Source of the DNA: Bigelowiella natans CCMP2755
Taxonomy: Eukaryota; Protista; Cercozoa
DNA length: 48,015 nucleotides
Assembly (NCBI GenBank): GCA_000320545.1
Contig: ADNK01001581.1
Location: forward strand, 1 to 48,015
Reading direction: 5' to 3'
Position numbers and translations under genes: made by a program
Notes under the pieces: model-generated
What the model saw: only the letters and a program-made list of their open reading frames with translations
What the model was told of the DNA's origin: nothing
The model's database searches: none
Shown here: in pieces, positions 6,996 through 34,000 of the stretch
Position numbering within the stretch: the first letter of the stretch is position 1
Layout: each line of letters starts with the position of its first letter

Positions 6996-7026
<31 letters not shown>

Positions 7027-7085
7027 AATATTTTATGATGCATATGTTTATGAACCTCAGCAGCATGACACAATTGCATATGCAG

Positions 7086-7127
<42 letters not shown>

Positions 7128-7351
7128 AAAGAGCTGGATAGACAGACAGACACACATAGATAGATAGAGAGAGAAATAGAGGAAGGTGGAAGGAGGGAGA
7201 TATAACACACCTCGTCTGGATCATCTCCTACGGTTTCCGCGGTGGCCAAGCCTGTTTGGCCACACACACCCCAGCCCCAGCACTTAACACCGCCGTCCTC
7301 CAGAAGCACGCACGTGTGAGCTGCCCCAACAGCGACCTGCATCACCACGTC

Positions 7352-7392
<41 letters not shown>

Positions 7393-8478
7393 GTAGAGAA
7401 GACATGCTAACAGCGTTAAGCGCGCAACCAACACCGCGACTGTATTTCATACATAACGCTTCTAAAGCGCGTGTACCTTGATCGGCCTATCTCCTGGGCG
7501 AGTTGAAGTTCCAAGATTCACTCTCGGGATTCCTTCGTTCGTCTCCGTGGGATCTAATGGTGGCCAAACAAGAGCCATTCAAATACTGCTACTGACAAGC
7601 AAACCAAGCAGCAACACATCCTAGCCACTACAAAGACAATCGAACGGAAGCGACGTAAGACGGAGGAAACGTGCCCGCCCCCAGCGCATGCGTTTGAAGC
7701 AGCAGATAATGCATTTTGCACATCCAGCAGATAATGCATTTTGCACATCTAGGCTTCTGTGTTAATCGGCGCGGAACGATGGGTATCTCTGCACGGAAAG
7801 AGGCACTACAAGCAATGAAGTAGCTCACCGTCGCCGATGTTTTCCGAGCTCCCTGACCCCAGTTGTCCATAGAATCCCGATCCCCAGCATCGCACGCCCC
7901 CATCATGAGATAGAACGACGCACGTATGATCTTCTCCAGCGGATATCGATTCCACGGTATAGTACTTGTTCGCAGATGATGCCGTTGTTGAACCTGGAAC
8001 ATTGAAAAAGGCGACGGCGTGACGACGGCGTCAACGACACAGAATTCAAAACAGGCAATAAAGCTGCTTCCAACAAGTGCTTGCATTTCTAAGGGCGAGA
8101 AAGCAACCTCCTTTCGAAGATGTATTGTTTTTCGTCCTAAAATTCGGTTCACTAGCATCCATGGTGTCTAAAGCCGAAGAGTCCCTGGTCCAATAACCTT
8201 GCCTTCCTCCTGCAAAGAGCATGAGTAGGTGGCACTTAGGGTTTAGAGGGGGTTGGTAATATCGGTGGCCAAAAATGTCATCAACTTTCGAGTTTGGAAC
8301 AATTGGCGAAAGAGAGGTTGTCATTTCCAACGAAACCACCTGATGAGATGCCGCTTCCTGCTCTGCTTTGGGCATTATTTGAGTTGGTGTTCCAAACAGC
8401 AAGGGCTTGTTGCTGAAACAGGCCGAATACGAATAATTGCAGAATGGGTACTCGCTGCCGCGAGTACTGCAGCGGCAT
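3993..8478 (-). CDS. RCC1/BLIP-II repeat (UVR8/HERC-like beta-propeller) protein with putative N-terminal signal peptide, multi-exon
   Basis: Exons encode typical RCC1 repeats: ISAGEDHTCVVLSHDGGVRCWGSGFYGQLG (~7830-7994), VAVGAAHTCVLLEDGGVKCWGWGVCGQTG (~7211-7336), LALGETHSCAILDDGKVRCWGCNTHQQLG (~6652-6873), VVAGSTFTCARGEDGK (~6320-6375), LALGSAHTCAVV (~4900-4960). ATG at 8478 starts MPLQYSRQRVPILQLFVFGLFQQQALA. The 3' exons and the stop at 3993 are less certain. Confidence 0.85.
7700..7749. repeat. Perfect 25-bp tandem duplication in an RCC1-gene intron
   Basis: cagcagataatgcattttgcacatc x2. Confidence 0.9.
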
Positions 8479-12409: not shown

Positions 12410-13770
12410 TGCAGACACAGGCACATGCATGCACAAAGAATTTTGAAACCTCCTAATGCAGTCATCGGCACATGCTTGCTAGCTTGGTCCAGCAAGAACA
12501 AATGCCACAGGTCTAGAGGTGCTCATTTGCAGCATGCCTACTATGCATGGTGTCATGCATGTAGTTAGTTTTAGTGCCTTTTGTGGTTGAAAGGTGTGTT
12601 TTCATCACATCTTTGAACCACTACGTACTAGACTACTAGACTAGACCCTTAGACTTTGATGGGCACAAACACTAGCACATAGCTTGTGTGCGTGTGCATG
12701 TGAGCACGTTTTGAATGGCAGTCGGGCAGTTTGCTCGATCATATGACAGGGCAACGAAAATTCAGTTTCGGGCCTAGCTAGCAGTAGCACGATTGGCTAA
12801 ATTGAGTCACTAGCTTTCGAACCCACTACAAACCGCAGTATTTTCGCATCAGAAACACACAAGAAATTGTGGACATTCGGTTCGCGCTCTGTGCGGCTAC
12901 ACTAGTACAGCTAGAGAACGCACGCTGGCAAGCACAGCATTGTTTTATGGCTTGCACGTCATGCATGCGCACTTGTTTCGTAGCTCGTAGCTTGCGCTAG
13001 TGCACGCAAAAATCGAATAAAAAGACAATTTATTGCATTGATTCTCACTGTACGTGTGTGTGGATGGCATTTTTGTGTACAGGGCAATGCATGATTGCTT
13101 GACTGGCTAGCTGGTGCCGTGCGGCATGAAGTCGTTAGCACCGTTCAACCGCGGCTAGGAGGCCTGAAACCACAGAATGTGAGCCATTTGGCCAAATACC
13201 GTTTGTTCCATGAGCATGCTCTGTGAGTGCGTGCACATTCGCCAACCAACCTGCTAGCATGCATCACATGTAAATGAAATACGAGTATCAAAATTTGACT
13301 TGAATGAATATCAATAACTTTCATGTTGCATCGCCAAAAATATCTGGTGCACTTGTTTCATGCAGCTCACCATGCAATGACAACCAGCAAGAAGCGATTG
13401 ACATTCTAGCATGCGGCACTCAAATGACAAGTTGTGAACACGCATGTGCCGCATGGGCGTGCTAGCGTGCACTAATGTGCGTCAGTTCCTGAATGGGTTC
13501 TCATGCTGTCATGCTAGCGCATTAGCGGCATGCATGTCAATCATCCAGGGACTGACCATGCGCGTTTCATTGCAAGTAGTAAAAAAAAAAAAATGTAGAC
13601 AGTGGCATTTGCAACACACATGACACGTGCTAGCGTCCTGATTGTCCATTGCAAATGCACATGCAGGCATGCACGATGCACACCATGATCATGGCAGAAA
13701 ATGCACATGCTGCGCTTGTTTAGGCTGGCTGCTCCGCTCTGAAGCACCAATTCAAGTGAACACACGCATG
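12410..13770. repeat. GCATGC/GCTAGC/TGCA palindrome-dense tract
   Basis: Dense gcatgc, gctagc and gtgcac words between the convergent 3' ends of the PLAC8 and IP3R-like genes. Confidence 0.7.
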
Positions 13771-13915
13771 TGTGTGCGTACCGATGCGATTCGGAGTCTT
13801 GCGCGCTTTTGATTTCGCCACGTTCAGTGCAAAAGGAAAGATTTGGATTTTTCAATGCTTTGCAACTGCTAACATGTCAAAGACTTCATTCATTCACATA
13901 ACTTTCCACACTGAT

Positions 13916-16900
13916 CTACCCTTCCTGCTTGTGGTCGAAACTCACATGCTTTCCAGCCTTTGTAAAGACATCGTCATCATCGTCTGACAAATCGCTAAAA
14001 GTTTCGTCTGCAGAGGAGTCACGAAGGTGCATAGTGCGCTCGAATCTAAACATGTAAGAAACACAAGTCAAAACGTAACCATCCTTCAAATTTAGCCAAG
14101 AAGTTGACGGAAAATAAATAATTTTCAACTTTTTGCTTCTGCATTCGTACACACAGGCATGATAGACAGAGGTAAAAAAACGAAAAAATAAAATAAATTT
14201 ATAAAAAATGGATTTAAAAACATACGGAATTATCCGGAACACTTTTGTGTCGTCAGTTATGAACTTCGAGACCTGCAACCATATTCAAAACTGCATTAGA
14301 TATTACTGTACAGCGTGAGAAATTAAGAGCACTGGTATATTCATGGAATCGATTTACAAGTGTACATTGTGGATAGAATCAATGGGTTGTACCAAAAGCT
14401 CAAGTCCAGTAAACTTCTCAGGGTGCTTTGAAGCACGTTCCAAGATATAGTATTTGAGATAGACGTATGACCACATGTTGTGCTCGACTGATATTGTTTA
14501 AAAAAAACACAATCGGTATATATAACCCGCTGAAAGTGTAGTCCTAACTCGAGATTGTCCCAACTCAAAGATTACCTTGAATGTGATGCTCATAGCCTTT
14601 GTGATCAGAACACTTATTAAATGTTTCATGATCGATGCGACACAAGAAACACTTTGTGGAAGCCTGAACATGAATTCAAAGCTGTGAGCTAATACATGCT
14701 AAAAAGGAGAATATTGCTTTTTGAGAATTCGGCAGAATTTTTCACCTCCTGATGAATTGCATCCCTCGTTGCTCGCATCTCAGCGAAAGTATCGATGATA
14801 ATACCTAAGAACCACCATTTCAATGAGATGAATTTATCTCACAATGAAGCATCATATGGATAAGGCTTCGATCTTTGCCATCATTTTACAATCGCAATAC
14901 CGCCGAAAGATAGCAATATGCGGACATCTACCGCAATACTTACCGGTAATAATGGCCACCAGAATAGTATTCACGATGAGGAAAAAAGATAGGTCGAACA
15001 AAGGCGTAAAGATCATCTCTGGATTATGCGTGAAAGTCTGATATTAAACATAGCAAGAGAGAAACCGTCACATACAGTTTCAATGCGCGTTCCACAACTA
15101 TAGTTGCGCCAAGTTCAAAGTACCCAGGCAAATAATAAACTGACAAGTAGGTACCGGTGTGTTTCGGAATCCTAAGTCGATGGATTTCTGGACGCAATCA
15201 AAAAGGTTCCCACAAGTGTACGCCTATTTTGAGTATAGAAGTTTGAGATTTAAGTGTGAATGGCACATCGTTATTATCAAGTATAAATTCGGATAGAAAA
15301 CTCATTTAAAAATTCTTTGTGTCTGTGCAGTGAAAAATACTCTCATCGTCGTAAATGTGATAAGTTTTTTACAGTATAATACCGTGTCATCGTCAACATT
15401 GAACAAAATCTTGTTGCGGAAGAAGACGAAGATGATGACAGCATATACATAGACGATGATGAGTCCAAGAACAATAGTGGCCACGATCCTATGTTAATGA
15501 ATAAGACAGATCTTAATTCCTCCCCCTCTCTTCTAATAAGTATAATTATGCAGCATTCTTTCCTTCAATGCCAGTTTCAATGCACATGCGCAAATGATAT
15601 ATACCTATATTTGTGCCTTTTGATGACAAATACAATACTCCTAAGATTTTCCACGTATTGAACGATGTCCACCTGTGGAACCAGATTAATCGGACAAAAA
15701 ATTAGTGTTTGTAGATCCAAATGTAAAATTCTCACACACGCACGCAAACACGCACACACGCACATACGCACGCGCGCACACATACATACACACCATGTGT
15801 TTGTGTATGATATAACTAAATAAATAAACAAATATGCTTTATATTATACTATGTATTCGTAGCACTTGTACGTGTTACATATACTCTCACACATATACTC
15901 GCACATAGCTACAACACATATTTCAGTATATGTATATTATATTGAGAAGGATAGGTTTGTGTAATCACATATATGTATTGTTTTGTGATCTTAGGGTTTT
16001 AATTCTTTTTTTTTTCTTAAAACAGATCGAATGCACAAATGACCATATGGAAAGCAACCCAAAGTGGAGAATGAACAACGGCTAGAGCCTAGTTAAATTG
16101 AAAAAATAAATAATCGAATAAGTCTGTGATGCTATCCGCCAGTAAAAACAAAAAATATGAGGGATAAATCATAAGTGCATAGAAAATGCAACGGCTTGCT
16201 TATCATTTCATTGTGCATTTGATGTAGGGAAGTATGACCGCCATTATCAGATATAAAGCGTAGTAGGTCAAGAGTGGAATTCTGGTTGCTATCTGAATGT
16301 GCCTGGTTAATTTCTGCATAAAGCACGACAAACATCCACTGACATCAGACAATCCTACACGTATGAGGGCATTTAGAGGGAAGTAGAGTATCATTGTATT
16401 GTAGGCACCCGCTATACCATAGACCCACACATCCACTCACCCATACACAAACACACCCACACATGCACGGCCCGAAGAGATTGTTTTATCAAATCATAAC
16501 CGTAAAAAGAATAAATGGATTGTCTTCTCATTTCTCGTTTGATGTCTTTGACTAACAAGGAAAATTCTGAATGAAAATAGCTCATGGATGTATACACGAA
16601 AACCTGAATTCCGAGTAATGAAACAATGGGAAAGCAGAAAGCTGTCTGGCCTACTTAGTTTCCATATGATCCATCGCTTGATTATCATGTTCCAACATTT
16701 TCAAGTAATGGCTTTGTAAAAAATACGATACTCTATTATTATTAAATGTATTCTTGGGCCTGCCATTTTTCCCGTACTATTCCCTGGTGGGAAAGAAAAA
16801 ATGTTGTTTCCCCGCCCCCCGTTCCATGTTACAATTACAATGAATACCTATTGACTCATTCCCAGTTGATTCATTGTGATGATCCCTAGATCTATCGTTA

Positions 16901-16998
16901 CACAACATAGAGCAACCATCAGCTCCAAAATTGCGAATAACGTTGCTTTTCACCCGTAAAAACAACTTGCGTGTTTGTTTGTACACACACATGCATTA

Positions 16999-17029
<31 letters not shown>

Positions 17030-18100
17030 TATGAGGGTGAAAATGGGATTTTGAGAATGTAGAAAATCATGTAAATTAATATGTGAATATACACATACTC
17101 CACACACAATCGCATAAACCCAATTTATCTCAGTTGAAACCTTTCTGGCTCACTTTGTTTCTTGTTCTTTTGTTCGACTTGATCCTTCATTTTAACCCAA
17201 AAACAAGAGTGAGTAGGCCTTTCTAATAAAAGTCTGGACGAGAGGTAGAAATATGCAAAGACTTTTAATTTTAAGGAAAAACTTGAAACCACCTGCTTCT
17301 CTGTTATGACCCATCCTTTGGGAACAAGACCAGCATTCTCCCCATCAGTTGGATATGAAATATTACTGCTTTCATGGTATGCCTTGGATATGGTTTTGCA
17401 GTGTTAATTCATTGATCAAATTTGTTTCTTGGCGACTAAATTATTTATCATTACAATAAGTGTTGCGACTAGAATATGACCTGATAAAAAGCGACGAGAT
17501 CTTCTCCCAAAAACCACGATGATATCATCAAAACCCTAATATACACAAACAACAAAGCGTTTTAAAGCTGCTTGTGTTTCCACCTCTCTGAATTACGATG
17601 CTTTTAACATATTGCTATTGAATGGAAAAAAGTAATCTTAACGTCAAGGCATCATTTCTGTATACGACGTTGCTACGAGATGAAGTACTCCCAAGATGGG
17701 AAACGTCGCTCTTAGAGCTTCGCAATTGGAGTCGGAATCCTCGGTCAACGTGTGGCCTTTAAGAGTAAATAAATGCAGCTTTGTAATGGCAGAACCAATT
17801 ATTGGCAATGTCAATCTACCGCCGGCGATACCATGATACATTGAAACAGTTGTGAATGAATGCCTTTATACCGTCGTACTTCAGCGCACAAGATGTGTTT
17901 GGAGGTCGGAAAAGCAGCAAACCTCCTTCATATCTAGACCTTTGCAAAATATGTGAGTTACAGTTGGTTTCCAAATGTTACCATAGCACCCAATGCACTG
18001 ACCATGTAATCAGAAGAATGTTAGTAACGACAACGAGGAAGTACGTAACAAGCCAAATTAAATCGAAATTATTCCGTAATCTGTTTATCAGCCTGATGGA
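13916..18100 (-). CDS. Ion-transport (TM1-6), pore, C2H2 zinc-site and C-terminal exons of the IP3R-like gene
   Basis: Spliced: LIWLVTYFLVVVTNILLITW (TM1) ... LLTYYALYLIMA|ALAVVHSPLWVAFHM|VDIVQYVENLRSIVFVIKRHKYR|IVATIVLGLIIVYVYAVIIFVFF...|AYTCGNLFDCVQKSIDLGFRNTP|TFTHNPEMIFTPLFDLSFFLIVNTILVAIITG|IIIDTFAEMRATRD. Confidence 0.9.
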
Positions 18101-21100
18101 TCAAAGAAAAGGCGAAAAAATCAAGTTGTTGATCCAGAACCTCTGGCTTCTTTGGCTGTGAGCATTGACCGAGAATAAAATTAACAATTTCTATGATGCG
18201 ACTAATTTCGGGCTAATTCACCATTTGGTACGACCTCACATCCTTGTTAGGAACTCAAATCCGAAATTTCATTAACACCCATATGACATATGTAAGGTAG
18301 TTGCGCATATGTTCATGCTATATCTAGTTTCAGGAAAAATTATACCCTTTCATCGCAGACGAATGTGCTGGTAAAAATAATTGCCCATATTCCCGTAAAA
18401 AATATTTGAAGAATCTCGGCAGCTGATGGTAGAAAATGGAAAAAGAATAATAAGGGAAATATGTAAACGTCGGAAAACTCTCACCTTTTCGTTATGAAAC
18501 TCGGCGATTTTCCACAAACTTGTGGATTTCTCCATGAAGACGGTGATTCGTTTGTCCTTATCTCCTTCCTCAAGCTACACAGTACGTGAAAATCTCATGA
18601 ACTCTTTTAGTGATCGTACTCGGAAATATTGCAAACATACCGCCGCGTCACGTATAGTTCGTCTCAAATCGGCAAAGCTTTGGCCAATATTAAATTGCCT
18701 TTTAAAGATTTACAATAAACGCGAGTTGCAGATAAACCCAAAATCACTTTTGTCTGAAAAATACCATGGCTTTACGAAAAAAACTCTGTCAAGCTCCTTG
18801 TTCGCATGGACAACTTCGCACTGTACTAAAGATTCGGCCTAACACATCACAGCAACCAACACGCAACGAAGTTAAACATATTACTGGCACAATAAAAACT
18901 ATACAAATTTTGGAATGAAATACAATTCCTAGAAATATTGCGATCCCCTACATACTTTCACAGAGAGAAAATAAATTCCCTCTTTTAAATCATAAATAGA
19001 TACGATGCAATCCAACGAAATATCGATTACTAATGAACTACCAATCGATGTTGACAAGGGATTTTAAGGATTAATTCCCTGTTCTTCACGTAGTTCCTAA
19101 TATTTATTTCATGCGCATCGTAAATATTTTACGAAGATGGTTAGATTATGTACTGTATATGCAAACAAGTAGTTAAATTTTTGTATCAAGAACTGTGCTT
19201 TCATCTGACCTCCACTCTTCTAGCACCTCCTTAATTCTCTTCACTTCATGCGGTTTGCCAGCATCCGTTATAGTTGTCAAGTAACCCCTATTTTAATATG
19301 TTAATTTCGGAGCCTCACATACACATCCTTTTCCCCATATTTGTCTTTTTGACAATTGCAAGTTCAAATGCAAACATAACTCACTATCAGTATCTCCTAT
19401 AACGCACACTTTTAGAATTGAGATGCATCTATGAGAAGAATGCACTCTATGGATAATTACATCCATTGTATATACCACAAAAAGAATATACCAGCGCACA
19501 TGCATGCATGCATCTTCATGGATATGTGCATGAACATGTGTATGCGTGTGAGTGCTTGAATATGTCAGGAAAAGTATAATTGCATGAGGAGTGCACACAA
19601 TATGCACTCACCAATACAAACAGACAATTTCAATATCCTCCGCATCAGTTGGGTGTGCCTTAAACCCATCCTTGATACTAAATAATCACAATTCAGACAC
19701 TATCTTAGATACAAGAATGAATTCCTTAGCATCATCTCAAAAAAACTGAACTCGAATTGCCACGGTATCTAATCTAGCAGTTAAAACGAAAATCGCTATG
19801 ATACTTTTGTAATTTTTCGTGATACAGATCCGTGTGCCAGACAAGCAACTTTTTCAGGACCTGGTCACGTATAAATAACAAATAATAGGCAATTTAAGTG
19901 GCGCATATATTTGAACCGACGAATATTTACAACACCTACGCACATGTGTCTTTGATGTAACGTTTTTGGATTTTTAATGAAGTGAAGCAAAAGGGCACTT
20001 AAAGCTAGAAAAATATAGAATGTATACATATAATTATGCACATATACAAAGTTTTACCTTTAACGGGCTTACATCTCCATCAGCTCGAATTGTAGTGTCG
20101 CGATTTAGCAGTCTAGCTTGGAAACTTATTGTCTTGCTGTTATTGCCCTCCATAATCGCAGATAGCAATTTCAGGATGTGTATCTCAATCTGGAAAAAAA
20201 TATAAATATTTGGAAATGCTCTCTCATATTAATCGATGAAAACCAACCCACGCAATGTTAAATTGCACGGCAATGTACATATAACTGGCATCTAAACAAT
20301 GCATTCAGAACGAATGTAAGATTAAGACACATATCATATTCCGATGAAAACAGTTCTTTATTTTTAAGGTGTCGTACATCTCTTAGCTTTCTCCTCAGGT
20401 ACTCTTTCTGTTCTTCGAGTGCCGCTACGTCTTTACCTTTGCCAGGTCGATATTGATATAACTTTCGGCATAACTCCAACAGTACAAAACATGATTCATA
20501 AATCTCATCCATTGTTCCTATCAATCGTTGGTTCTCCCTAGCAGGCCCAACGCACATCTCCCGCAGTACTCGTAATGCATCTCGCACCAGCTCCAGCATT
20601 GTAGAACGTTGCTGCGCATAACCTTGGTGTTTGTCAATCATCTCTTTCAGATCTTTTTGCAATGCATGGACAAACCAGACTGCCTCAGAGACAAGATTTT
20701 GATCCCTTTCACCCTCTTGGTCGCGTAAGTAATCTGCTGTCCCTGTTCGTACTCCTCCCATGCATAAACGAAACAAAAATCCCAGAGACAACTCAACAAG
20801 ACTCAACTCTTCCGCTTGGTGTTTTAGATAGTGCTGCTTTGCTTCCTGTTGGTGCATGAGCACCCGCTGCTGGAAATCGTGCAAAATATCCCTTACGACC
20901 GCTAGCACACGATTTTCTTGATCATTCTTCATTATTCTTAAGTACCTGAACATACATTATAGGAACAAACGTGAAAAATAAATAATAAAATGTACGTAAG
21001 AGTGGAATTACACACGCAAAATATTCAAATAATTTTGTTATTCGGATAAGTAATGCAAAGCACCATGTATTTTGTATAAAAAAAATTACTCTCTCTGAAT

Positions 21101-24100
21101 CTTTGGGTCGCCAGTATTCAGAAGAATATTAGCCAAGAATAAACCCTCGCGTGTTGCTGTCCCTGTTCTTGACCCCTTTCCCAAATGGCAATAAGAATCA
21201 ATAATTAAGTCTACGGATAACTCCGCAAATCTAAAATCTTTTGCAAGTAACAATCGGCGGAGAGCAAAATCCTCAGTGTCGTCGGGATAAGAATATCCTA
21301 TACCATTGAACGGCTTGGAATCTCTCTTGTGTTTGGAGGACCATGTGCGCAGCATTTGGATTACTACTCGGTAAAGTAGACTCGACTTTTCGTTTCTACC
21401 GAAGTCTTCTTTGATAATGTTACGGATACTGCTAAATAAATCTAAGACCCCAAGAACAGTTTCCTTCCGCTTTGCATCTGTGATGTCTGGATCAGATTCC
21501 GAGTTAGCAATCGAGTTATGTATGAGACCAAGCGTCTGCGCTTGGCTATCCTCTTTCTCTATGCCTGGACTTTCTCGACAAAGTGTTTGAAATACGTAAA
21601 GTATAAGCCAAGTCGGTAACAGAATAAGAATACAGCAAATAAAGTATAAAATAATTGGTCCTGACCAGACCAACTCCTTCAAAATCTTACACAAGAAGTT
21701 CAAACCTCTGAAAATTCGTGACTTCCATGAAGCACCATCGGTGTATCTAGAGTCGTCTTCTTCTTTCATATATTGATTATCAACATTGAACATGAACTCT
21801 TGTTCCTTTCGATCGACAGCCGAATCATTAGACGGTTTCTTCGAATTCATGTCTTCCTTGGAGGAGCGTTGGATAATGTACTCAAGACGAGATGATAAGG
21901 AATCCTGTTTCTCAACGACGTGACTTGGAAAGTGTCGCAGATCTGGTGAGATATGCGACAAAGAACACTTGGTGCAAAACAACCCCTCACGGTCTAAATC
22001 CATGTTGGGGCAGTAAAGATTACCTTTAGTGGCATCTTTGTTACCCTGTCTTTTTTTGTGATTACATGAAGTATTTGGAGTTTTCATGTCCTCTTTCCCA
22101 AAGTGCTCGGTACTATTCATCAACTTTTTAACCTGTCTATTTAGCTCAGATGCAATGGATTTAATACCTTCTTCCTTTACTTGTTGTTCGAAAGAAATGT
22201 ATTTTTCTAAATCCAAATCCGCATCTTGATGTCGCCGATTTTCTTCTTTGAAATTTCTGTACTCAGGATCTAGAGTACGCCAGTATAACCGTTCCTTTAA
22301 CGTCTCAATCATTTTTTTCCAAGGACCGCTCTCGTGCTCATTTAAAACCTCGCATAATTCAAGATAGTTGTAAAGAGGTAGCCCAGCCTTTTCCAAGTTA
22401 TCAACAAAGCCTCTAATACTTCCTTCAGGAACTTGTAACTCCTTTTTAACTGATCTGATTTTTTCCACCCATTTAGCAACGACTTTCGGATCTGTAACTT
22501 TTGAGTTCTGTTTCACCATGCACATGAGCCGCGACACAATAGGACCGACAAGACCATACGTATATTCCATTACCTCAAGGAATAAAGTTTTCCCAGGACC
22601 CTCAGGAATTTGTTTTCTGTTCTTACCCACGAGAGGAATTGGGAACTTTTGGGAGTGTTTTATCTCCACCAGATACGGCCTAAGTACTTTAACGTGTGCT
22701 AGAAAATGGTCAACAATTCTATTGAAAATTCCGAGAGCCGTGTTATTCACGTGAGCCGTGTGAATCCATGCCTCGTGTAGAAAGAGGAGAGTGGCTTTGC
22801 GAACACGATTGCATTCCCTAGCACGGGCATCGAAAACATACCAAAGCTTGGATGGACTAAATCGGGTTGCATAACCAATAACAGTCTTCGGACTATATTT
22901 CCCTTTGCAACTGTCTTCTAATTTTTCCATCAACATTTTGGCATCAAGAAGATTTTGCATGCGGTTTTCTGCTTTTGAATGTTTCCCCTGTGCTGTTGCT
23001 GTGAGCAACTTAAGGAATTGATAGCTTTCGCTATAAGCCACATGGGTCTTATTGGAAAAACCTTTCATCCATTCTACACTGTCCCCGTCAGGAACTGCAA
23101 TTGCACCTTCCTGTCTAATTGGCTTAGGCTTAATCTTACATTTTCCTGCATCAGTTTGCCAAAACAAAATATTTCGAATTACAGCGCCTGGATGGTAGAC
23201 GCCGACTCCAAGGTTTATCAGCGACTTCCAAAGATCATCCAAGCTCCCCTTTACTTTAAACTTCACTTCAAAGAGTCTCTCAATTTTTCCGGAATAACGC
23301 TCAAGGCGGAAAGCTTTTCCAACCTTTTCAAAATCTTCGGAAGGGCTCCACTTTTTATATGCATATTTGAGTTTTTTAGCATCTTTCAAGATTTCTTTTT
23401 CATGGATGTGTATTCTGATTTGCTGCAATATTTCACATTTCAATTTGAAACAATGTGCGTACTCGTCATCCACTATGCTTTCTTCGAGTGATTTTTGGAG
23501 ATTATCCTCGCACTTAATCCACCAATTTATCTCCTTCCCTGGATAGCAGAACTCTCCTGTACGACGTTGAGATAAAATTGCTTCTTCGATTTTTTTGACG
23601 CACTCCGCCACCATCTTTTTCCGAGCTTGAGTGTCATCATTTGGCCGGTGAGTCTTTAAAATTACCTTCACTTTTTCACTGATGGTATCAAACGTGGAAG
23701 ACCTTGAAATTCGGGAATCACCCTCCAAAGTGCTAGAGCTGTCACGAGGTGACGCTGGTGGGCCAGATTGAGCCGGTTCAACTGGATTGGTAACAGTACG
23801 TAATCTCATTCCCTCATCTCCTTCATTTGTCCGGTTATTTGTCTTGCGTTCCTTGACGTATTTAAAGGGTTCTAAGGAGTAAATGTTATCTTCTGCAATT
23901 ATTTTCAAAGGGCTGTCTGGCCAGACGGTTTCGTCAGATATAGTGGGTTCAATTTGATTAATAACACTTCCCGTCTTATTTTCAGAAGTAAGCAAATTGT
24001 CCTCCTCAGTCAATCTGACTGCAAACTTGCTCACGTCATTAATTCTGAAGGGTAAAATGAGTTTGTTTCCCCACATTTCGGCAACATCAAGCAACTCGAC

Positions 24101-27100
24101 AACCGCCATTTGAGCCACACGATTCGGAAGTTCATGGCCAGGATTAGGGGACATGATCTTCTGAAGGAGAGATAGCACACTGTCACAGCAAGAGAATTCG
24201 TCGGATCTATAGTTTCGAAACAGAACAAACGATTGGAATAAAGCCTCGATGTCGTTTCTGGAGAAGGTTCGGCAAATATCAGAACTTGATATACAACTGG
24301 AAAGAAGAATTGTCGCCACTTTATTTACGCAAGCGAACGACCATGCAAGGTTGGTATTGTGATCATGGTTTTGTGGATTTTCTTTGCCCTCTTCTTCTCC
24401 AGCAAATTTGTCAGCATCTTGGTTCGATGTCAACTCGAATTCGCGATTTTGACATTTTCTCATGAGATGTACCGCCAAATTGTTGCCGTGTTTCAACACC
24501 TGCAAATCATGGAATTGTGAATGGCACAACAATAAGTCGTGAGTGCAACCGCGACCTCAAGCAACTCCGTGATGAGTCCTTTTTCCGTTGCCAACCGTTT
24601 TGAATTACGAATGGACTGTTCTGTTAACAATGGGGAATGAACATTTGATGCAACAACCTTTGTAGGCACACAGAAATGTCGACAAAAACAAAATTATCGA
24701 ATTAAAATTGCAGACCCCATGTTCCGTCGTTTCTTTGTTTTGCACGCTTTGAGTTCAAATCGACACCTTTCAAGCGAAATGTACCGTCTCAAATCAAAAC
24801 ACATGAGCCCATTTCTATGTTGGTTGCTTGCCATGTGCATGTCAAAAAATGATACGAATGCTGAATGCAGAATATGTGATTTTGGTCATGACACTTTTCA
24901 AGTTTTAACGTTCCGCCAAAAAGTTATAGTCCACCTCCGAAGAACTGCAGAAGCTCTAGACAACACATTGTTATTTGCTTGTGCATCAATGCCTGGGCCC
25001 GGCAAAAAATGTTCAATAAAGAATTTGAGACTTGGAAAAATGACGCAAAATGCACGCTTCCATGCTGGTTGTGTAACTAATCAAAAATTTCGAACCAACC
25101 ATGAAGAAAACAAGGTTTGTAAGGTATTTCAAAGGAAAAAATAATGCTTTTTGAATTTTCAAGTTTGTGTGATGGCAAGCCGCTTCATTATGGTCCACTG
25201 AACAATGCGGAGCACCTCTTCTTCCTTTGACATTGTATCTGTTTTGTTGTCACATGGTTGAAACATGCACGGCTAAATCAAGCGAAACACAAACGCGAAA
25301 GTGTGGTGAAAATTGCGATTGCGGACATAAAATGCATAACGTTTAATCGCATGAATATACCTTCGAAATGTTCTCCCGGCTGCTCATTTTTGGCAAAGCT
25401 GTAAAATTCCCACACACCACAACTAGTGGTCATTTTTTTCCTCAAGGGATTTGTCTGTTGAAATCAAATAAATACATTACATCCCGAAGTTTTTAAAAAT
25501 GCCCAAGCTGTACATTGAATTCACTGTGTAGTGACAATGTTGCCTGTTTAGTTGAACCCACTCGATGCATTTTCATGATTTGCCCGATCCGAACGTGCAC
25601 ATTCAGACTTGCCAATATGACTTGCAAACGTTCTCGGACACCTCATGATTGATGCAAATGTGAAAATGTTAGATTTTTCCTTCAATTGAAAAAATGTGTT
25701 TGCTGTAACACTGTACCACCAACAGTGCGTTGCCAAAATACAACTTGCCTCTAGAACCAAAAATGTAAAACTATGTTGCTTTCACACAACTCGCATGTGG
25801 ATGAAAAACAGTAACTAGTTACCCTTGTCAGGAAGCTGCCGTTGTTTTTTGTGTGATTTTGCGCGTTTGAGTTCGCGTGGGGTGATTGAGGCTCCGTGTT
25901 GGCCCATCGGCAACTGATGAGGCGATGAGACTCCGTGTTGGCCCACCGGCAACTGACGTCGAGGATGCACGAAAACGGGGGCATTTAACACTTGCAGACA
26001 AGAAAATGATTTTAAATTTCACAACAACAAAAACCGATAGAAGTTCAACTATGTTTATGCGTAACTTTAGTCGGGGTCAATAAAAAAGAGAATCGGTTCT
26101 TCGGAATAAAATAAATTTATGTTTGGGTTGGTGTCCATCTTCTATGTAGTGGAAAATAAAAAAATATTGCGATCAGTAACCTTTTGTTCAGGCTCAGATT
26201 GGGATGTGTACTTGAGCACTTGTAGCAACTCTTGAAGCACTAGATTGATTGTGGCCCACTTTGTTCTACTGAGACTAGAACTGCAAAAACCATTTTGCCA
26301 TTTTGCAACGTCATGTATATGCTGAAATCAAACCACTGTTTGACACATGCTGACAAAGAATGACTATAGAATTGCTGCATCCAATTCAATAGAGTTTAAA
26401 TTTTGCCTAACACAATCAATTCGCAGACCTCGTGTGGAACTCATTTAATGTGTTACTTTGCTCCTGGAGGTACGCATACACATCATCCAGTGTCTCCAAA
26501 GTCCGGCTGTTAAACAATCCACCCATTTAAAAGATTTCGCGAAATACAGTTAGATATCAGTACCAATTTTTACTGTGCCAGAAAAATATGATAATGCAGC
26601 CACCCAAAATAGAAGGCACATGTGCAACATCTCTGCTTTTGACCCGAAGATCAAAATGAGTTCGAACTTCAGTGAGTTTCGTGTTAATTCTTTACTGCTT
26701 AAAGCGAACATTCAAACTATCTGTTTTCTATTTACACAACTCATACCAGATTCTTCTCCCAACATTTTTTTCAACAACCCGGCTGCTACGTCTCGATCTC
26801 CTTGGCATTGCAGCAAAATCTTTAAGCTAATACAGATGAAAATATGTGATTGTTATAAGAATACACTCTGTGGATGTTGTTTGGTCAAGTAATATCATAC
26901 TTCCATTTCCGCTCGTATGCTACGGGAACGTGACATATCCCTACGAATCCCCTTTATTTTCTAAACAAAGAAACGAATTTAGCTAATGTGAACCAATAAA
27001 ACAATATTTGGAAAAACTTAACCCAACAAAAAGTTAATCGTAAATGCATGGAGTTTCAAATTCGAGCCCGAATCTAGACCAGAAATCATACCCTTTTAGT

Positions 27101-31045: not shown

Positions 31046-34000
31046 AGGAATTATAAATAGCTCTTATAGACTCATGCTGATGATTTCGGGTCCCAAATAG
31101 GAACATATAAACCCTGACTCAACCGTCATTTCTTTGAAAAATTAATATGTTAAAGCAACTTTTACGAAAATAATTTTTTCATGGTTTTATTGTAACTTGA
31201 AATGAAATTACCTTCCGTATCCACGCGAAAGCAATGAGGATTCGCTCCAAAAGAACATCTTAAAAATTTCCTGTTGATTGGTTTCTATGTGGACCTGTAA
31301 GAGTTGCCATAAATGAACGAAACATTTTCTAATATGGCCAGACGCCAAGGTTTCGTTTGATTCGCTCTATTTAAATCCTAACATTTTTTTTAAATCCAAA
31401 AGTAAAAACAATATTCTTACATTGCCGTATTCGCAAAATACTGTAACAAAGTCTGGAATTTTTTTCCAAACCTAACGATCAAACAAATATGCGCTTTAAT
31501 TCTCGACGTACTCGAAAACATTAACTTACACACGCATGAAGAAGAAAACATGATATAGCTACTAGTTCAATAGATTTTCGACATGATCCAGGAACGACTA
31601 CAACCAATTTTGCAATAGTAGCACGGATTGATATTTGAAGATATCAAAATTAAGATCTGACTAGGGTGATAACCGTTTCAAAATTCCACATCATGAGCCG
31701 AACAAGATGATTGTGCCATCCATGTACAATGCAACTCCTAAAAAAATACAGTTCTATTACATTTTTTATATCTGGGAGTCTGTGTACGAGCATGGTAAAA
31801 TATATGAACTAACTTTTTAGAAGTCTCCGAGTTAGTACTTTCTTCCTTGAATTCACTTTCTTCATCACTGCGGGTTTCTCTAAGAGATGCACCATCAATC
31901 ACATAGCAAATAGCCACCATATATTAGCTTAACGTTCAAGAATACTGTGTTATACACATAAAATAATGAATTACAAGAAATAATGATTGCACGACATGTC
32001 CGAAGTGCATGGCACTTATCCATAGTTCCAAGTTTCATATTCAATTTCGCAAACCTTGTGAAAAGTAACTTTCTGTTGTCTTTGTAAAGATAACGGATTT
32101 GCTCCAGGAGGATATTCGCCTTTGATAATAATTTTTGGTAATAATTATGCCGAAATCAAACTAAAATAAATCTGAAAAACATCAATAATTACAATATAAA
32201 CATAAAAATTGTCCCACTATATCAATATGCAAGTACTAGTTTAGATTCTCCTTCGGTAACGAGCCAGTCCCAGATATATGTTAGATATCTAAGTTATGGT
32301 TAATCTTACAGAAACGTAATCCAAAATTCTATCAACTTTTCAACTTTTCAATTTCAGTGTCACTAAATTATGATTTGACATGGACTGAAAAAAGGTCAAT
32401 CGGTGTGGTCATAGCATTCGTGCACTTCGTGCACAACTTAATGTTGAGTTTCCAAAATAACAACGCACATTCATTCGTATACAACCTTTGTCCTGCATTG
32501 TTGTTATTGTTTCGATTGCTGCAAAATCTCTTTGCCACCTGACCAAAAATAAGTGTGCATATGCCATATAGTTTTGTATTGCATTTGTTGACACTTCTTA
32601 ATGTAGTTTCTCATAGTAGTGTCTCATATTCATTTTTTAACTTAAAATAGTTCATATGACATACGTAAGTCTTCATTGATTCGTTCATCCAGGCCATCAA
32701 TTTGAAGAGGTGTAAAATCTGTTCCATAACACGATTAGAAAAATAAAAGTGCTTTTGTTAAACACGTTAAATGCATAACTCGATCCAGTGCTAGTCAAAT
32801 TCTCACTTCCGTTATAATGTTTATCACTAATTGCAGTTTAAAATAGTGCATTGTTTACAAAATACAATTAGAAACTAACTTTTTATCAAAGTGAATATCT
32901 CTAACATTTGTCCCAATGATTCAGAAATAAATCAGATGTGCATCAAAGTAACTAAAACGTGCTCTATGAGAGTATATTTAATATCAGGTAAAGTTCTTCT
33001 GACCAAATAAGATAATAATACTTTACAACTAAGACGTCAAATTGAAACACTTACCGTACATATCAGCTCCGTGGTTATTCGGGTTATTCTTCTTAAGTGC
33101 GCAATCAACTAAAACATTTACCAATTGTACGAAACATGTGTTAAAACTTCGAAAAACCTTTTTTTTTTCTGAAATGGGATTGAGGTATAGAAAATACACT
33201 CATTACAATACTTTGTTGCTTTGATATTCTTTCAGATCTTTTTTGCCAGTCTATAAGTAACACAATAATGTCAAATGGCATGTATGATTATTGTCATTAG
33301 ATAACGAAGATATATTGGAATCCAAAAAGCAGTATTTACTAATTAAAGTTTAAAAAAGTTGTTTTAATTAAATATTGTTTGCACGCAAAAGGAGCGTTTT
33401 AGTATTTACCTTCATTCCATCCTTACCCCACTTCCATTTGGGCTTTTGGATCTATTTATTTTGTCAATGAAGAAGGAAGTCCGCTTCAAATTTGATTCTT
33501 TTTTTTTCTCTTATTGGTAACAAAAGACTTTTCAAGATATACAACAGACAGCCAGCATGATTGTAATGTTGCTTCTGAGACGGAAAAACAAAAATCTCTT
33601 GTACGTATACTAGGCTTTTTAGTTGGAAATTTGTAAACCAACAAAATGTCTACCGTTTTTTTGCGTCTTTTTTTTTTCGAAAATGACATGTCTGTTTAAT
33701 CAAACGATAAAGTTAGCAATCCTGCATGCATATTTGCTAAAATAAATAAGCCTGTGTAACTAGGACAAATCAACAACGTAAATCCATGGTGGATAAAATT
33801 GATCACAAAATTAGAGACCCTAAGTTAAAAATGTCAAATTATTATAAATAGGACTTCAATTTCAAACCTTCTTCTGTCCTTAGAGATAGCCTACCTTTTT
33901 TGTCTTCAGACATTTTACAATAGAGTTTAACTGTCTTTTCGTACAACCTGATATACCAAGGCCATAATGTTTGTAGAGTGTCGACAAGTATTAACAATAA

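What the first reader, a model, noticed from the sequence alone, without database searches (positions are those of the whole stretch)
14944..15223. IP3R-like channel whose GGG(I/V)GD selectivity filter is replaced by GFRNTPTF
Seen: exons 15223-15155 and 15037-14944 splice in phase to CVQKSIDLGFRNTP|TFTHNPEMIFTPLFDLSFFLIV. The 117-nt intron between them holds no Gly-rich micro-exon. Known: IP3R/RyR pores have pore helix + G(L/V)R-x-GGG(I/V)GD, then a loop, then TM6. Here the pore-helix G-x-R, the TM6 gate (GIIIDTFAEMR) and the C2H2 Zn site are kept, but the filter glycines and Asp are gone and the loop is short. Inference: a channel subfamily with altered ion selectivity or conductance, or a non-conducting regulatory subunit.
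Basis: partly seen in the sequence, partly recalled or inferred. Interest (0 to 1): 0.8.

Follow-up and report, generated by a model that had tools for sequence, protein, structure and literature searches.

The report
Calcium-release channel with a short, glycine-free pore loop
This alga (Bigelowiella natans) has a real IP3R/RyR-type channel gene that lacks the usual GGGxGD ion filter, and the same short pore loop marks a deep, untested branch of this channel family found in many single-celled eukaryotes.

Summary
Exons 15223-15155 and 15037-14944 (minus strand) have GT..AG borders and join in frame. The join reads GFRNTP|TFTHNP, where canonical channels have GxRxGGGxGD. The 117-nt intron has stops in all three frames and no Gly-rich stretch.

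The join is not a mis-splice. A paralogue in the same genome (contig C3039) encodes pore helix, GFRNTPVFTRDP and S6 in one uninterrupted exon of the same length. Homologous proteins, several from transcriptomes, align across it with gaps only at the introns.

The genome is Bigelowiella natans. An exhaustive HMMER search found the same short P-loop, consensus D-Y-G-F-R-x-x-P-V-W, in about 60 protein clusters. Named members come from Rhizaria, ciliates, dinoflagellates, a stramenopile, a euglenid, Diphylleia, Rhodelphis and a choanoflagellate.

With the filter columns removed, these proteins sit on one side of a well-supported tree split (98/98). Animal IP3Rs, an insect RyR and protist GGGxGD channels sit on the other side.

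Only two such genes were found in B. natans, and both are short-loop. No canonical-filter gene was detected.

S6 gate, Zn finger and RIH_assoc domain are kept, so a working cation channel with altered permeation is the likeliest reading. That is inferred, not shown. The Paramecium literature had already noted aberrant filters, but no biophysics was found.

The parts
21086..24532 (-). single long open stretch (1148 codons) of the cytosolic regulatory region of the same gene; no Pfam family
   Evidence: Partly collinear with homologues P0001, P0002 and P0004.
20258..20953 (-). open stretch holding the RIH_assoc domain (match 20495-20803). It includes the Ca2+-sensor region, where LCE(G/N)HN is replaced by LCMGGV (20767-20750) and the second Glu is kept in LREMCVGPA (20566-20540).
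   Evidence: Pfam PF08454 E 1.6e-8, 34.8 bits, above the cut-off; six-frame scan; alignments.
15605..15672 (-). exon encoding the stretch just before S5 (VDIVQYVENLRSIVFVIKRHKY+)
   Evidence: AG at 15674-15673 and GT at 15604-15603; tblastn of P0099.
15383..15488 (-). exon encoding S5 and the short lumenal turn (...IIFVFFRNKILFNVDDDT)
   Evidence: AG at 15490-15489 and GT at 15382-15381; tblastn; profile hit.
15155..15223 (-). exon encoding the pore helix and first half of the P-loop; ends DLGFRNTP
15038..15154 (-). 117-nt GT..AG intron; stops in all three frames, no Gly-rich micro-exon
   Evidence: The paralogue has no intron at this position.
14944..15037 (-). exon encoding the second half of the P-loop (TFTHNPEMIFTP) and most of S6 (...NTILVAIIT+G)
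14746..14804 (-). exon encoding the S6 hinge and gate, GIIIDTFAEMR...
14576..14663 (-). exon with the C-x2-C half of the C-terminal zinc site
14393..14487 (-). exon completing the H-x4-H half of the zinc site (..VEHNMWSYVYLKYY..)
14226..14272 (-). penultimate coding exon (VSKFITDDTKVFRII+)
   Evidence: matches the tail of P0003.
13916..14045 (-). last coding exon with an acidic tail and the stop codon (13918-13916)

Best explanation
The window holds the 3' half of a large gene of Bigelowiella natans, on the minus strand from about 13.9 kb to at least 24.5 kb and probably to about 36 kb. It encodes a tetrameric intracellular cation-release channel of the IP3R/RyR superfamily. Shown: its pore-forming loop is about 8 residues shorter than in IP3Rs and RyRs. 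It reads D-L-G-F-R-N-T-P-T-F-T-H-N-P instead of G-x-R-x-G-G-G-(I/V)-G-D. The splice that produces this is correct. The same loop (consensus D-Y-G-F-R-x-x-P-V-W, usually followed by an acidic residue) defines a clade that is separate from canonical IP3R plus RyR and present across many protist lineages. Inferred: S5, the pore helix, the S6 glycine hinge and Ile/Asp gate (GIIIDTF), the C-terminal zinc finger and the RIH_assoc domain are all conserved. The two B. natans genes are also the only members of the superfamily found in this genome. The protein therefore most likely still opens and closes like an IP3R or RyR and conducts cations, probably including Ca2+, out of an internal store. Its lumenal constriction would be built from the R-N-T-P-x-F turn (backbone and Asn/Thr oxygens, an aromatic packing residue, nearby acidic residues) rather than from a glycine carbonyl ladder and an Asp ring. 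Conductance and selectivity should therefore differ. What opens it is unknown: no IP3-binding core was detected, and one Glu of the conserved Ca2+-activation site is replaced in the chlorarachniophyte copies.
For: Splice and sequence. An intron-less paralogue exon has the same length and motif. Homologues are collinear, with gaps only at introns. Family membership: RIH_assoc is above the Pfam cut-off. The close homologue fragment P0003 matches RyR1-3 (E 1.8e-25) and IP3R1-3 (E about 1e-17) channel domains by sequence. Its AlphaFold model (pLDDT 83.9) matches IP3R and RyR transmembrane domains by Foldseek at E about 1e-9, probability 1.0. Clade: 59 of 86 HMMER hits from 1.84 billion representatives carry the short loop. 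Several come from transcriptomes (Paulinella, Diphylleia, Salpingoeca urceolata, MMETSP), so mRNAs encode the short loop. In the tree built without filter columns, 35 short-loop rows stand against 22 canonical rows in one split, UFBoot 98 / SH-aLRT 98. The split is still recovered (SH-aLRT 87) after the pore helix, S6 and gate columns are removed as well. Conservation of GFRN(T/V)PxF across the two paralogues and four other chlorarachniophyte-type proteins argues for purifying selection. An acidic residue lies within 6 residues after the aromatic in 54 of 61 members. Only two loci were hit in the genome, and both are short-loop.
Against: No functional data exist for any member that I could find. 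In canonical channels, from my own knowledge of IP3R1 and RyR1 mutagenesis (not re-read here), the filter Asp and glycines are needed for normal conduction. Their loss could therefore mean a non-conducting protein. The window copy has His-Asn where most members have acidic residues (its nearest Glu is at +5), so it may differ even from its paralogue. A monomer model cannot show a pore. No activating ligand site could be recognised: Ins145_P3_rec, MIR and RIH were not detected, and the first Ca2+-sensor Glu is replaced. No transcript evidence for this particular gene was available. The tree uses only about 300 columns of the channel domain and is unrooted.
Confidence: 0.62

Rival explanations
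1. Non-conducting or scaffold subunit: the protein keeps the tetrameric architecture but has lost ion permeation. It would act as a regulator, tether or sensor, alone or mixed with its paralogue.
For: The GGGxGD glycines and Asp are absent. The window copy also lacks the acidic residues at +2/+3 that are typical of the clade. IP3-binding and Ca2+-sensor features are not recognisable.
Against: No canonical partner gene was found in the genome with four different queries. The pore helix, P-loop motif, S6 hinge and gate are conserved across very distant taxa, which is hard to explain for a pore that carries nothing.
Confidence: 0.2
2. Annotation or splicing artefact: a micro-exon or alternative splice site restores a canonical filter in the real mRNA.
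For: No transcript of this very gene could be examined. The intron length (117 nt) is a multiple of three.
Against: The intron has stops in all three frames and no Gly-rich stretch. The paralogue has the same sequence without any intron. Transcriptome-derived homologues have the same short loop. tblastn shows no residues missing.
Confidence: 0.02
3. Decaying pseudogene copy of a once-canonical channel.
For: The N-terminal ligand-binding region is reported as dismantled by another first-stage note (s1-762623). The Ca2+-sensor Glu is lost.
Against: At least ten consecutive 3' exons are open with GT..AG borders and correct phases. A 1148-codon exon is open. The same 'losses' are shared by orthologue-like proteins of other chlorarachniophytes, so they are old and maintained.
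Confidence: 0.04
4. Convergent loss: the short loop arose several times by independent deletion of the filter in different lineages, so there is no single ancient clade.
For: Inside the canonical clade several proteins show independently eroded filters (P0023, P0073, P0086, P0037/P0057). Filters can therefore decay. The tree is unrooted and based on one domain.
Against: Short-loop rows form one side of a 98/98 split with filter columns removed. The split persists without the pore helix, S6 and gate columns. The replacement motif itself (G-F-R-x-x-P-V-W) is shared, not just the deletion.
Confidence: 0.1

Closest known systems
Metazoan ryanodine receptors (RyR1-3) and IP3 receptors (IP3R1-3), channel domain
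   Same: The S5, pore helix, S6 and C-terminal domain fold is shared. So are the G-x-R at the end of the pore helix, the S6 Gly hinge and I-I-D-x-F gate, the C2H2 zinc finger and the RIH_assoc domain. Sequence matches to the close homologue P0003: RyR E 1.8e-25, IP3R E about 1e-17. Fold matches are at E about 1e-9.
   Different: There is no GGG(I/V)GD, and the P-loop is about 8 residues shorter. S6 reads ..AII(S/T)G.. (RyR-like) rather than the ..LN(I/L)(I/V)FG.. of the IP3Rs and protist GGGxGD channels. No Ins145_P3_rec, MIR, RIH, SPRY or RyR-repeat domain was detected in the B. natans paralogue. The first Ca2+-sensor Glu is replaced. The clade lies outside the split that holds both IP3R and RyR.
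Paramecium tetraurelia Ca2+-release channels (CRC groups V and VI; Ladenburger and Plattner 2011, PMC3213138)
   Same: These are IP3R/RyR-like proteins conserved mainly in the C-terminal channel domain. [quoted passage not shown] CRC-VI shows 'practically no similarity' in the filter. Ciliate members of the short-loop clade exist (Protocruzia, Pseudocohnilembus).
   Different: I could not obtain the Paramecium sequences, so identity of the motif is not verified. That work gives localisation (trafficking vesicles, contractile vacuole, endosomes) but no permeation data. It does not describe a pan-eukaryotic clade.
Other chlorarachniophyte and Paulinella proteins (Amorphochlora GAB5361007.1, an MMETSP transcript, Paulinella chromatophora and P. 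micropora models; the B. natans paralogue jgi Bigna1 70738)
   Same: The same GFR(N/S/T)xP(V/T/E/I)(F/W) loop, the same S6 and the same RIH_assoc-only Pfam picture. Identity to the paralogue pore exon is 46-76%.
   Different: All are unannotated ('hypothetical protein' or unnamed). The window copy has T-H-N-P after the aromatic, where the five other chlorarachniophyte-type proteins have an acidic residue before the Pro (Paulinella has neither).
IP3R-A / IP3R-B / RyR scheme of Alzayady et al. 2015 (Mol Biol Evol 32:2236)
   Same: It is a superfamily-level classification of the same proteins. From memory, IP3R-B from Capsaspora did not bind IP3, which parallels the missing ligand-site features here.
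   Different: The paper is not held in the library, so its filter sequences could not be checked. Its scheme was built for Opisthokonta. The short-loop clade here lies outside the split that contains both metazoan IP3R and RyR. It does include one choanoflagellate protein with full IP3R domain architecture (P0045).

Membership tests
IP3R/RyR superfamily of Ca2+-release channels | RIH_assoc (PF08454) domain in the cytosolic region | tested here: met
   Window ORF 20258-20953(-): E 1.6e-8, 34.8 bits against a cut-off of 28.5; six-frame scan 33.9 bits.
IP3R/RyR superfamily of Ca2+-release channels | C-terminal S5, pore helix, S6 channel domain homologous to solved IP3R and RyR structures | tested here: met
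   Window exons are collinear with P0001, P0002, P0004 and P0099. The homologue fragment P0003 matches RyR at E 1.8e-25 and IP3R at E 2.5e-17. Its model matches IP3R and RyR TMDs with Foldseek at E about 1e-9. The window's own exons were searched singly, not joined.
IP3R/RyR superfamily of Ca2+-release channels | S6 glycine hinge and I-I-D-x-F gate, followed by a C-x2-C ... H-x4-H zinc finger | tested here: met
   Read directly: GIIIDTFAEMR (14804-14746), CFLC...(14663-14576), H-IQVE-H (14487-14393).
IP3R/RyR superfamily of Ca2+-release channels | selectivity filter GGG(I/V)GD after the pore-helix G-x-R | tested here: not met
   Replaced by N-T-P-T-F-T-H-N-P, with the loop about 8 residues shorter.
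Bona fide IP3 receptor (IP3-gated, Ca2+-co-activated) | N-terminal suppressor and IP3-binding core (Ins145_P3_rec, MIR) and RIH domains | tested here: inconclusive
   PF08709 and PF01365 gave no six-frame match anywhere in the genome, but the tool's control genomes hold no positive. The paralogue protein P0001 shows only RIH_assoc at E <= 0.001. Exon fragmentation and divergence may hide the domains. Deep members of the clade (P0045, P0107) do have them.
Bona fide IP3 receptor (IP3-gated, Ca2+-co-activated) | Ca2+-activation site: two ARM3 glutamates (rat IP3R1 E1978 and E2042, PMC9522344) plus a linker Thr | tested here: not met
   The first Glu (LCE(G/N)HN) is replaced by Gly-Gly (LCMGGV, 20767-20750). 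The second Glu is kept (LREMC, 20566-20540). The mapping was checked by the 64-residue spacing in fish IP3R3 P0121. The Thr was not examined.
Ryanodine receptor | SPRY domains, RyR repeats, size about 5000 aa | tested here: not met
   No such Pfam families in the paralogue P0001 (4129 aa). The insect RyR P0098 shows them. The window gene's 5' part was not scanned exon by exon.
Short-P-loop clade (unnamed; defined here) | D-(Y/L)-G-(F/L/W/Y)-x-x-x-P-x-(W/F) directly after the pore helix, about 29 residues before the S6 hinge Gly | tested here: met
   The window reads D-L-G-F-R-N-T-P-T-F, then 29 residues to the hinge Gly.
Short-P-loop clade (unnamed; defined here) | placement on the short-loop side of the tree split when filter columns are excluded | tested here: met
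   Tested for the paralogue P0001 and the orthologue-like P0099, not for the window's own spliced product (joining was left out): 98/98 support and SH-aLRT 87 with the pore block removed.

The most novel reading that the evidence does not exclude
The short-loop proteins are a third ancient branch of the IP3R/RyR superfamily. It would already have been present in the last eukaryotic common ancestor, been lost from animals, fungi and land plants, and have a permeation pathway built without the glycine/Asp filter. In chlorarachniophytes it would be the only branch left, and it has also shed recognisable IP3- and Ca2+-sensor residues, so these cells would release store ions through a channel gated by an unknown signal.
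Probability: 0.35. Interest if true: 0.8.

Novelty: new variant of a known kind. Interest (0 to 1): 0.58.

Why it matters
All structural and biophysical understanding of IP3R and RyR permeation rests on the GGG(I/V)GD filter. A widespread natural clade keeps the gate, pore helix and coupling machinery but replaces that filter with a shorter Pro/aromatic loop. This makes it a ready-made experiment on what the filter contributes to conductance and Ca2+ permeability. It also matters for protist cell biology. B. natans, and probably other chlorarachniophytes, dinoflagellates and ciliates, may rely on these channels for store release. Surveys that score 'IP3R present/absent' by the canonical pore or N-terminal domains will misjudge them. 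Finally, it bears on the origin of the superfamily: the split appears to predate the IP3R/RyR divergence.

Tried and rejected
Exons were searched singly by reference, and the paralogue's single uninterrupted exon (L003:1453-1695:-) was the query for the one exhaustive search.

(2) The word-index searches were nearly blind here. P0009 gave 3 hits and P0108 gave 3 hits. P0020 gave 27 hits, which supplied the canonical reference sequences.

(3) A search for a canonical IP3R or RyR in the genome found none. The Exaiptasia IP3R gave no hit at all, not even the window gene, so that query is insensitive. The protist canonical protein P0111 hit only C3039. A profile of 13 mostly GGGxGD-type channel domains hit only C3039 and C2156, plus one weak hit on a four-domain channel. 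A DNA pattern for GGGxGD matched at the level of its reversed control and is uninformative.

(4) The Pfam RIH and Ins145_P3_rec genome scans were empty, but the tool had no positive control.

(5) A third weak locus (C3455, E 0.15) shows nothing channel-like in its ORFs and was dismissed as chance.

(6) P0130 and P0069 were left out of the final trees as very long branches. In the first quick tree P0130, a canonical-filter protein, sat weakly (63) next to a short-loop row.

(7) Alzayady et al. 2015 could not be read. Paramecium CRC sequences could not be fetched, so the link to CRC-V and CRC-VI rests on that paper's wording only.

(8) No paper mentioning both Bigelowiella and IP3R was found.
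Full report
**What is in the sequence**

On the minus strand the window reads ...ag|GCG TAC ACT TGT ... GGA TTC CGA AAC ACA CCG|gtacct..., then 117 nt, then ...atatcag|ACT TTC ACG CAT AAT CCA.... Translation gives a pore-helix exon (15223-15155) that ends D-L-G-F-R-N-T-P. The next exon (15037-14944) starts T-F-T-H-N-P-E-M-I-F-T-P and runs into a hydrophobic S6. The intron has stop codons in all three frames and no Gly-rich stretch.

Further 3' exons follow, each with GT..AG borders and matching phases:
- the hinge and gate G-I-I-I-D-T-F-A-E-M-R (14804-14746);
- C-F-L-C plus 18 residues (14663-14576);
- H-I-Q-V-E-H-N-M-W (14487-14393);
- two last exons, ending at the stop at 13918-13916.

Upstream lie S5 (15488-15383), an RIH_assoc domain (20495-20803; Pfam 34.8 bits against a cut-off of 28.5) and a 1148-codon open exon (21086-24532).

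**Is the join real?**

Each exon was searched by reference. The S6 exon and the zinc-finger exon each found one other locus in the same genome, on contig C3039. There the pore helix, loop and S6 lie in one uninterrupted open exon that reads ...D-L-G-F-R-N-T-P-V-F-T-R-D-P-V-P-V-I-T-P..., then S6 and G-I-I-I-D-T-F.

The two window exons align to it consecutively and without a gap, at 13/23 and 18/31 identities. tblastn of related proteins against the window places gaps exactly at the two introns, with no missing residues. A missing micro-exon is therefore excluded for practical purposes. The two loci are paralogues, not alleles, because they differ in intron structure and share only about 57% identity over these two exons.

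**Whose genome, and who else has this loop?**

The paralogue's 81-residue exon was used for the single exhaustive HMMER search of 1.84 billion representatives. The 100% hit is a 4129-aa model of Bigelowiella natans (EukProt EP00466; jgi Bigna1 70738). This identifies the genome, and other notes of this scan name the same organism.

Of 86 hits at E <= 0.001, 59 carry the same short loop. The consensus is D-Y-G-F-R-(S/N)-x-P-V-W, and there are typically 29 residues from the aromatic to the S6 hinge Gly. Canonical G-L-R-x-G-G-G-(I/V)-(G/A)-D proteins appear only at the bottom of the list.

Named short-loop members:
- Rhizaria: Amorphochlora, an MMETSP transcript, Paulinella chromatophora and P. 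micropora;
- ciliates: Protocruzia, Pseudocohnilembus;
- dinoflagellates: Symbiodinium, Abedinium;
- a stramenopile: Platysulcus;
- a euglenid: Ploeotia;
- Diphylleia (CRuMs) and Rhodelphis (Archaeplastida);
- a choanoflagellate: Salpingoeca urceolata.

Several of these are transcriptome assemblies, so mRNAs do encode the short loop. Contamination of single-cell transcriptomes cannot be excluded for individual taxa.

**How the loop relates to the canonical filter**

MAFFT places one gap over G-G-G-I-G-D-x-L-x-x and aligns the invariant Pro of the short loop with the Pro of canonical ...R-K-P-S / ...E-D-P-A-G. HMMER against RyR instead aligns N-V-P-T-F-V-E-D-P with G-I-G-D-E-I-E-D-P and opens gaps of 3 and 4 residues. 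Either way the glycines and the filter Asp are gone, and the G-x-R before them is kept.

An acidic residue lies within six residues after the aromatic in 54 of 61 members, mostly at +2 or +3. The paralogue has T-R-D-P. The window copy has T-H-N-P-E, so its nearest acid is at +5.

The short loop always comes with an S6 that reads ..(A/S)-I-I-(S/T)-G-I-I-I-D-T-F. The IP3Rs and protist GGGxGD channels have ..L-N-(I/L)-(I/V)-F-G.., while the insect RyR has ..A-I-I-Q-G...

**Is it a clade?**

I aligned about 355 residues around the pore from 59 proteins (33 short-loop, 20 canonical, 6 odd). The filter columns were removed before building trees.
- The quick tree put the animal IP3Rs, an insect RyR and all but one of the protist GGGxGD channels in one starred clade (97). 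Short-loop rows fell outside it.
- A careful IQ-TREE run (LG+C20 PMSF), without the two longest branches, put 35 short-loop rows against 22 others in one split. Support was UFBoot 98 / SH-aLRT 98.
- After the pore helix, S6 and gate columns were also removed, the split was still recovered at SH-aLRT 87.

The tree is unrooted and single-domain. 'Clade' therefore means 'one side of a split that has both IP3R and RyR on the other side'. Within the canonical side several proteins have independently eroded filters (P0023, P0073, P0086, P0037/P0057). Those keep the canonical S6 and do not have the G-F-R-x-x-P-V-W replacement.

**Fold and family**

P0003 is a 271-aa fragment from an uncultured relative that covers S5 to the C-terminal domain and shares the N-x-P-T-F loop. 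It matches RyR1-3 at E 1.8e-25 and IP3R1-3 at about 1e-17. Its AlphaFold model was built from a 40-sequence alignment and has mean pLDDT 83.9.

The model has a pore helix at 101-111, a non-helical loop at 112-126 (pLDDT 83-88) with a small beta bridge to the S5-P turn, and a long S6 at 127-171. Foldseek's best matches are IP3R3, IP3R1 and RyR1 transmembrane domains at E about 1e-9, probability 1.0. A monomer model cannot show which atoms face the pore axis.

**What else is missing**

Chlorarachniophyte-type proteins give only RIH_assoc, with or without Ion_trans, in Pfam. Deep members of the clade (Salpingoeca urceolata, Rhodelphis) keep Ins145_P3_rec, MIR and RIH. Loss of recognisable ligand-binding domains is therefore secondary within the clade. 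This agrees with the other first-stage note on 31212-36194, which I did not re-examine in detail.

In the RIH_assoc region, the first Glu of the conserved Ca2+-activation site is replaced. That site is rat IP3R1 E1978/E2042 (PMC9522344), and its 64-residue spacing is reproduced in a fish IP3R3. In the window the Glu is replaced by Gly-Gly (L-C-M-G-G-V, 20767-20750), and all five other chlorarachniophyte-type proteins also have Gly-Gly at that position. The second Glu is kept in the window copy and in four of those five. Rhodelphis and Diphylleia keep both.

**Genome content**

A chlorarachniophyte-type protein (P0002) hits only contigs C2156 (the window) and C3039. A canonical protist channel and a profile of 13 mostly GGGxGD-type channel domains hit only these two loci. 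An animal IP3R hits nothing. The assembly is fragmented (3736 contigs) and the first-look filter is word-based. The result is therefore 'no canonical-filter gene found with these queries', not proof of absence.

**Mechanism**

Shown: correct splice, family membership, the short loop, its conservation and distribution, and retention of the gate, hinge, zinc finger and RIH_assoc domain.

Inferred: the protein assembles as a tetramer and gates like IP3R and RyR through S6 and the C-terminal domain. It would conduct cations through a lumenal constriction formed by the R-N-T-P-x-F turn and nearby acidic residues. The result would be different conductance and Ca2+/monovalent selectivity.

A pure scaffold role is less likely. 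The pore elements are conserved over very large evolutionary distances, and no canonical partner was found. The activating signal is unknown.

**Literature**
- Prole and Taylor 2011 found GGGxGD conserved in parasite homologues (PMC3194816).
- Oomycete channels have GGGIGD or GGGLG(G/S) (PMC7399828).
- Diatoms are reported to lack IP3Rs (PMC11085791).
- Ladenburger and Plattner 2011 noted that Paramecium CRC-V has a shortened pore-to-TMD6 distance with a 'shift' of the filter. They also noted that CRC-VI shows practically no similarity there, and they left permeation open. They localised these channels to trafficking organelles (PMC3213138).
- I found no paper that describes the G-F-R-x-x-P-V-W loop, a pan-eukaryotic short-loop clade, or any IP3R/RyR-type channel in Bigelowiella.
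- Alzayady et al. 2015 was not available.

**Verdict**

The scan's notes hold no earlier report of this finding on other DNA.

Noticed in passing
window 20750-20767 and 20540-20566 (minus strand): In the RIH_assoc region the first glutamate of the conserved IP3R/RyR Ca2+-activation site (LCE(G/N)HN) is replaced by Gly-Gly (LCMGGV), while the second (L-x-E-x-C) is kept. All five other chlorarachniophyte-type homologues also have Gly-Gly at that position. Rhodelphis and Diphylleia members of the clade keep both glutamates.
   Followed up: partly
G000:C3039 about 12500-26800 (L003, L005); protein P0001: Second short-loop channel gene of B. natans (jgi Bigna1 70738, model of 4129 aa). Its pore helix, loop and S6 lie in one exon, and it has T-R-D-P where the window copy has T-H-N-P. 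These are the only two loci of the superfamily that my queries found in the assembly.
   Followed up: partly
window 21086-24532 (minus strand): A single 1148-codon open exon inside the channel gene has no Pfam family and is only patchily similar to homologues. It is a large lineage-specific part of the regulatory region.
   Followed up: no
window 14046-14225 (minus strand): The last intron is 180 nt and has no in-frame stop (the ORF 13916-14278 is continuous). Retaining it would insert 60 residues without breaking the frame. The spliced form fits homologue tails better.
   Followed up: no
proteins P0023, P0073, P0086, P0037/P0057 (environmental): Within the canonical clade several proteins have independently degraded filters (for example G-I-R-D-T-G-D-F, G-A-R-S-D-S-G-I-G-N, G-L-L-Y-G-E-L-P-N-F) while keeping the canonical S6. 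Filter erosion has therefore happened more than once in the superfamily.
   Followed up: partly
proteins P0007/P0100 (environmental, near the chlorarachniophyte group in the tree): A member of the short-loop side has a roughly 15-residue insertion in the loop (G-F-R-T-G-I-H-P-L-R-P-D-E-T-T-G-R-D-Y-Y-I-P), so the loop length is not fixed in this clade.
   Followed up: no
window 7025-7450 (minus strand): An ORF with an RCC1 repeat (PF13540, E 3.4e-10) lies in a more GC-rich stretch (4-8 kb, GC 0.51-0.56). It is a neighbouring, unrelated gene.
   Followed up: no
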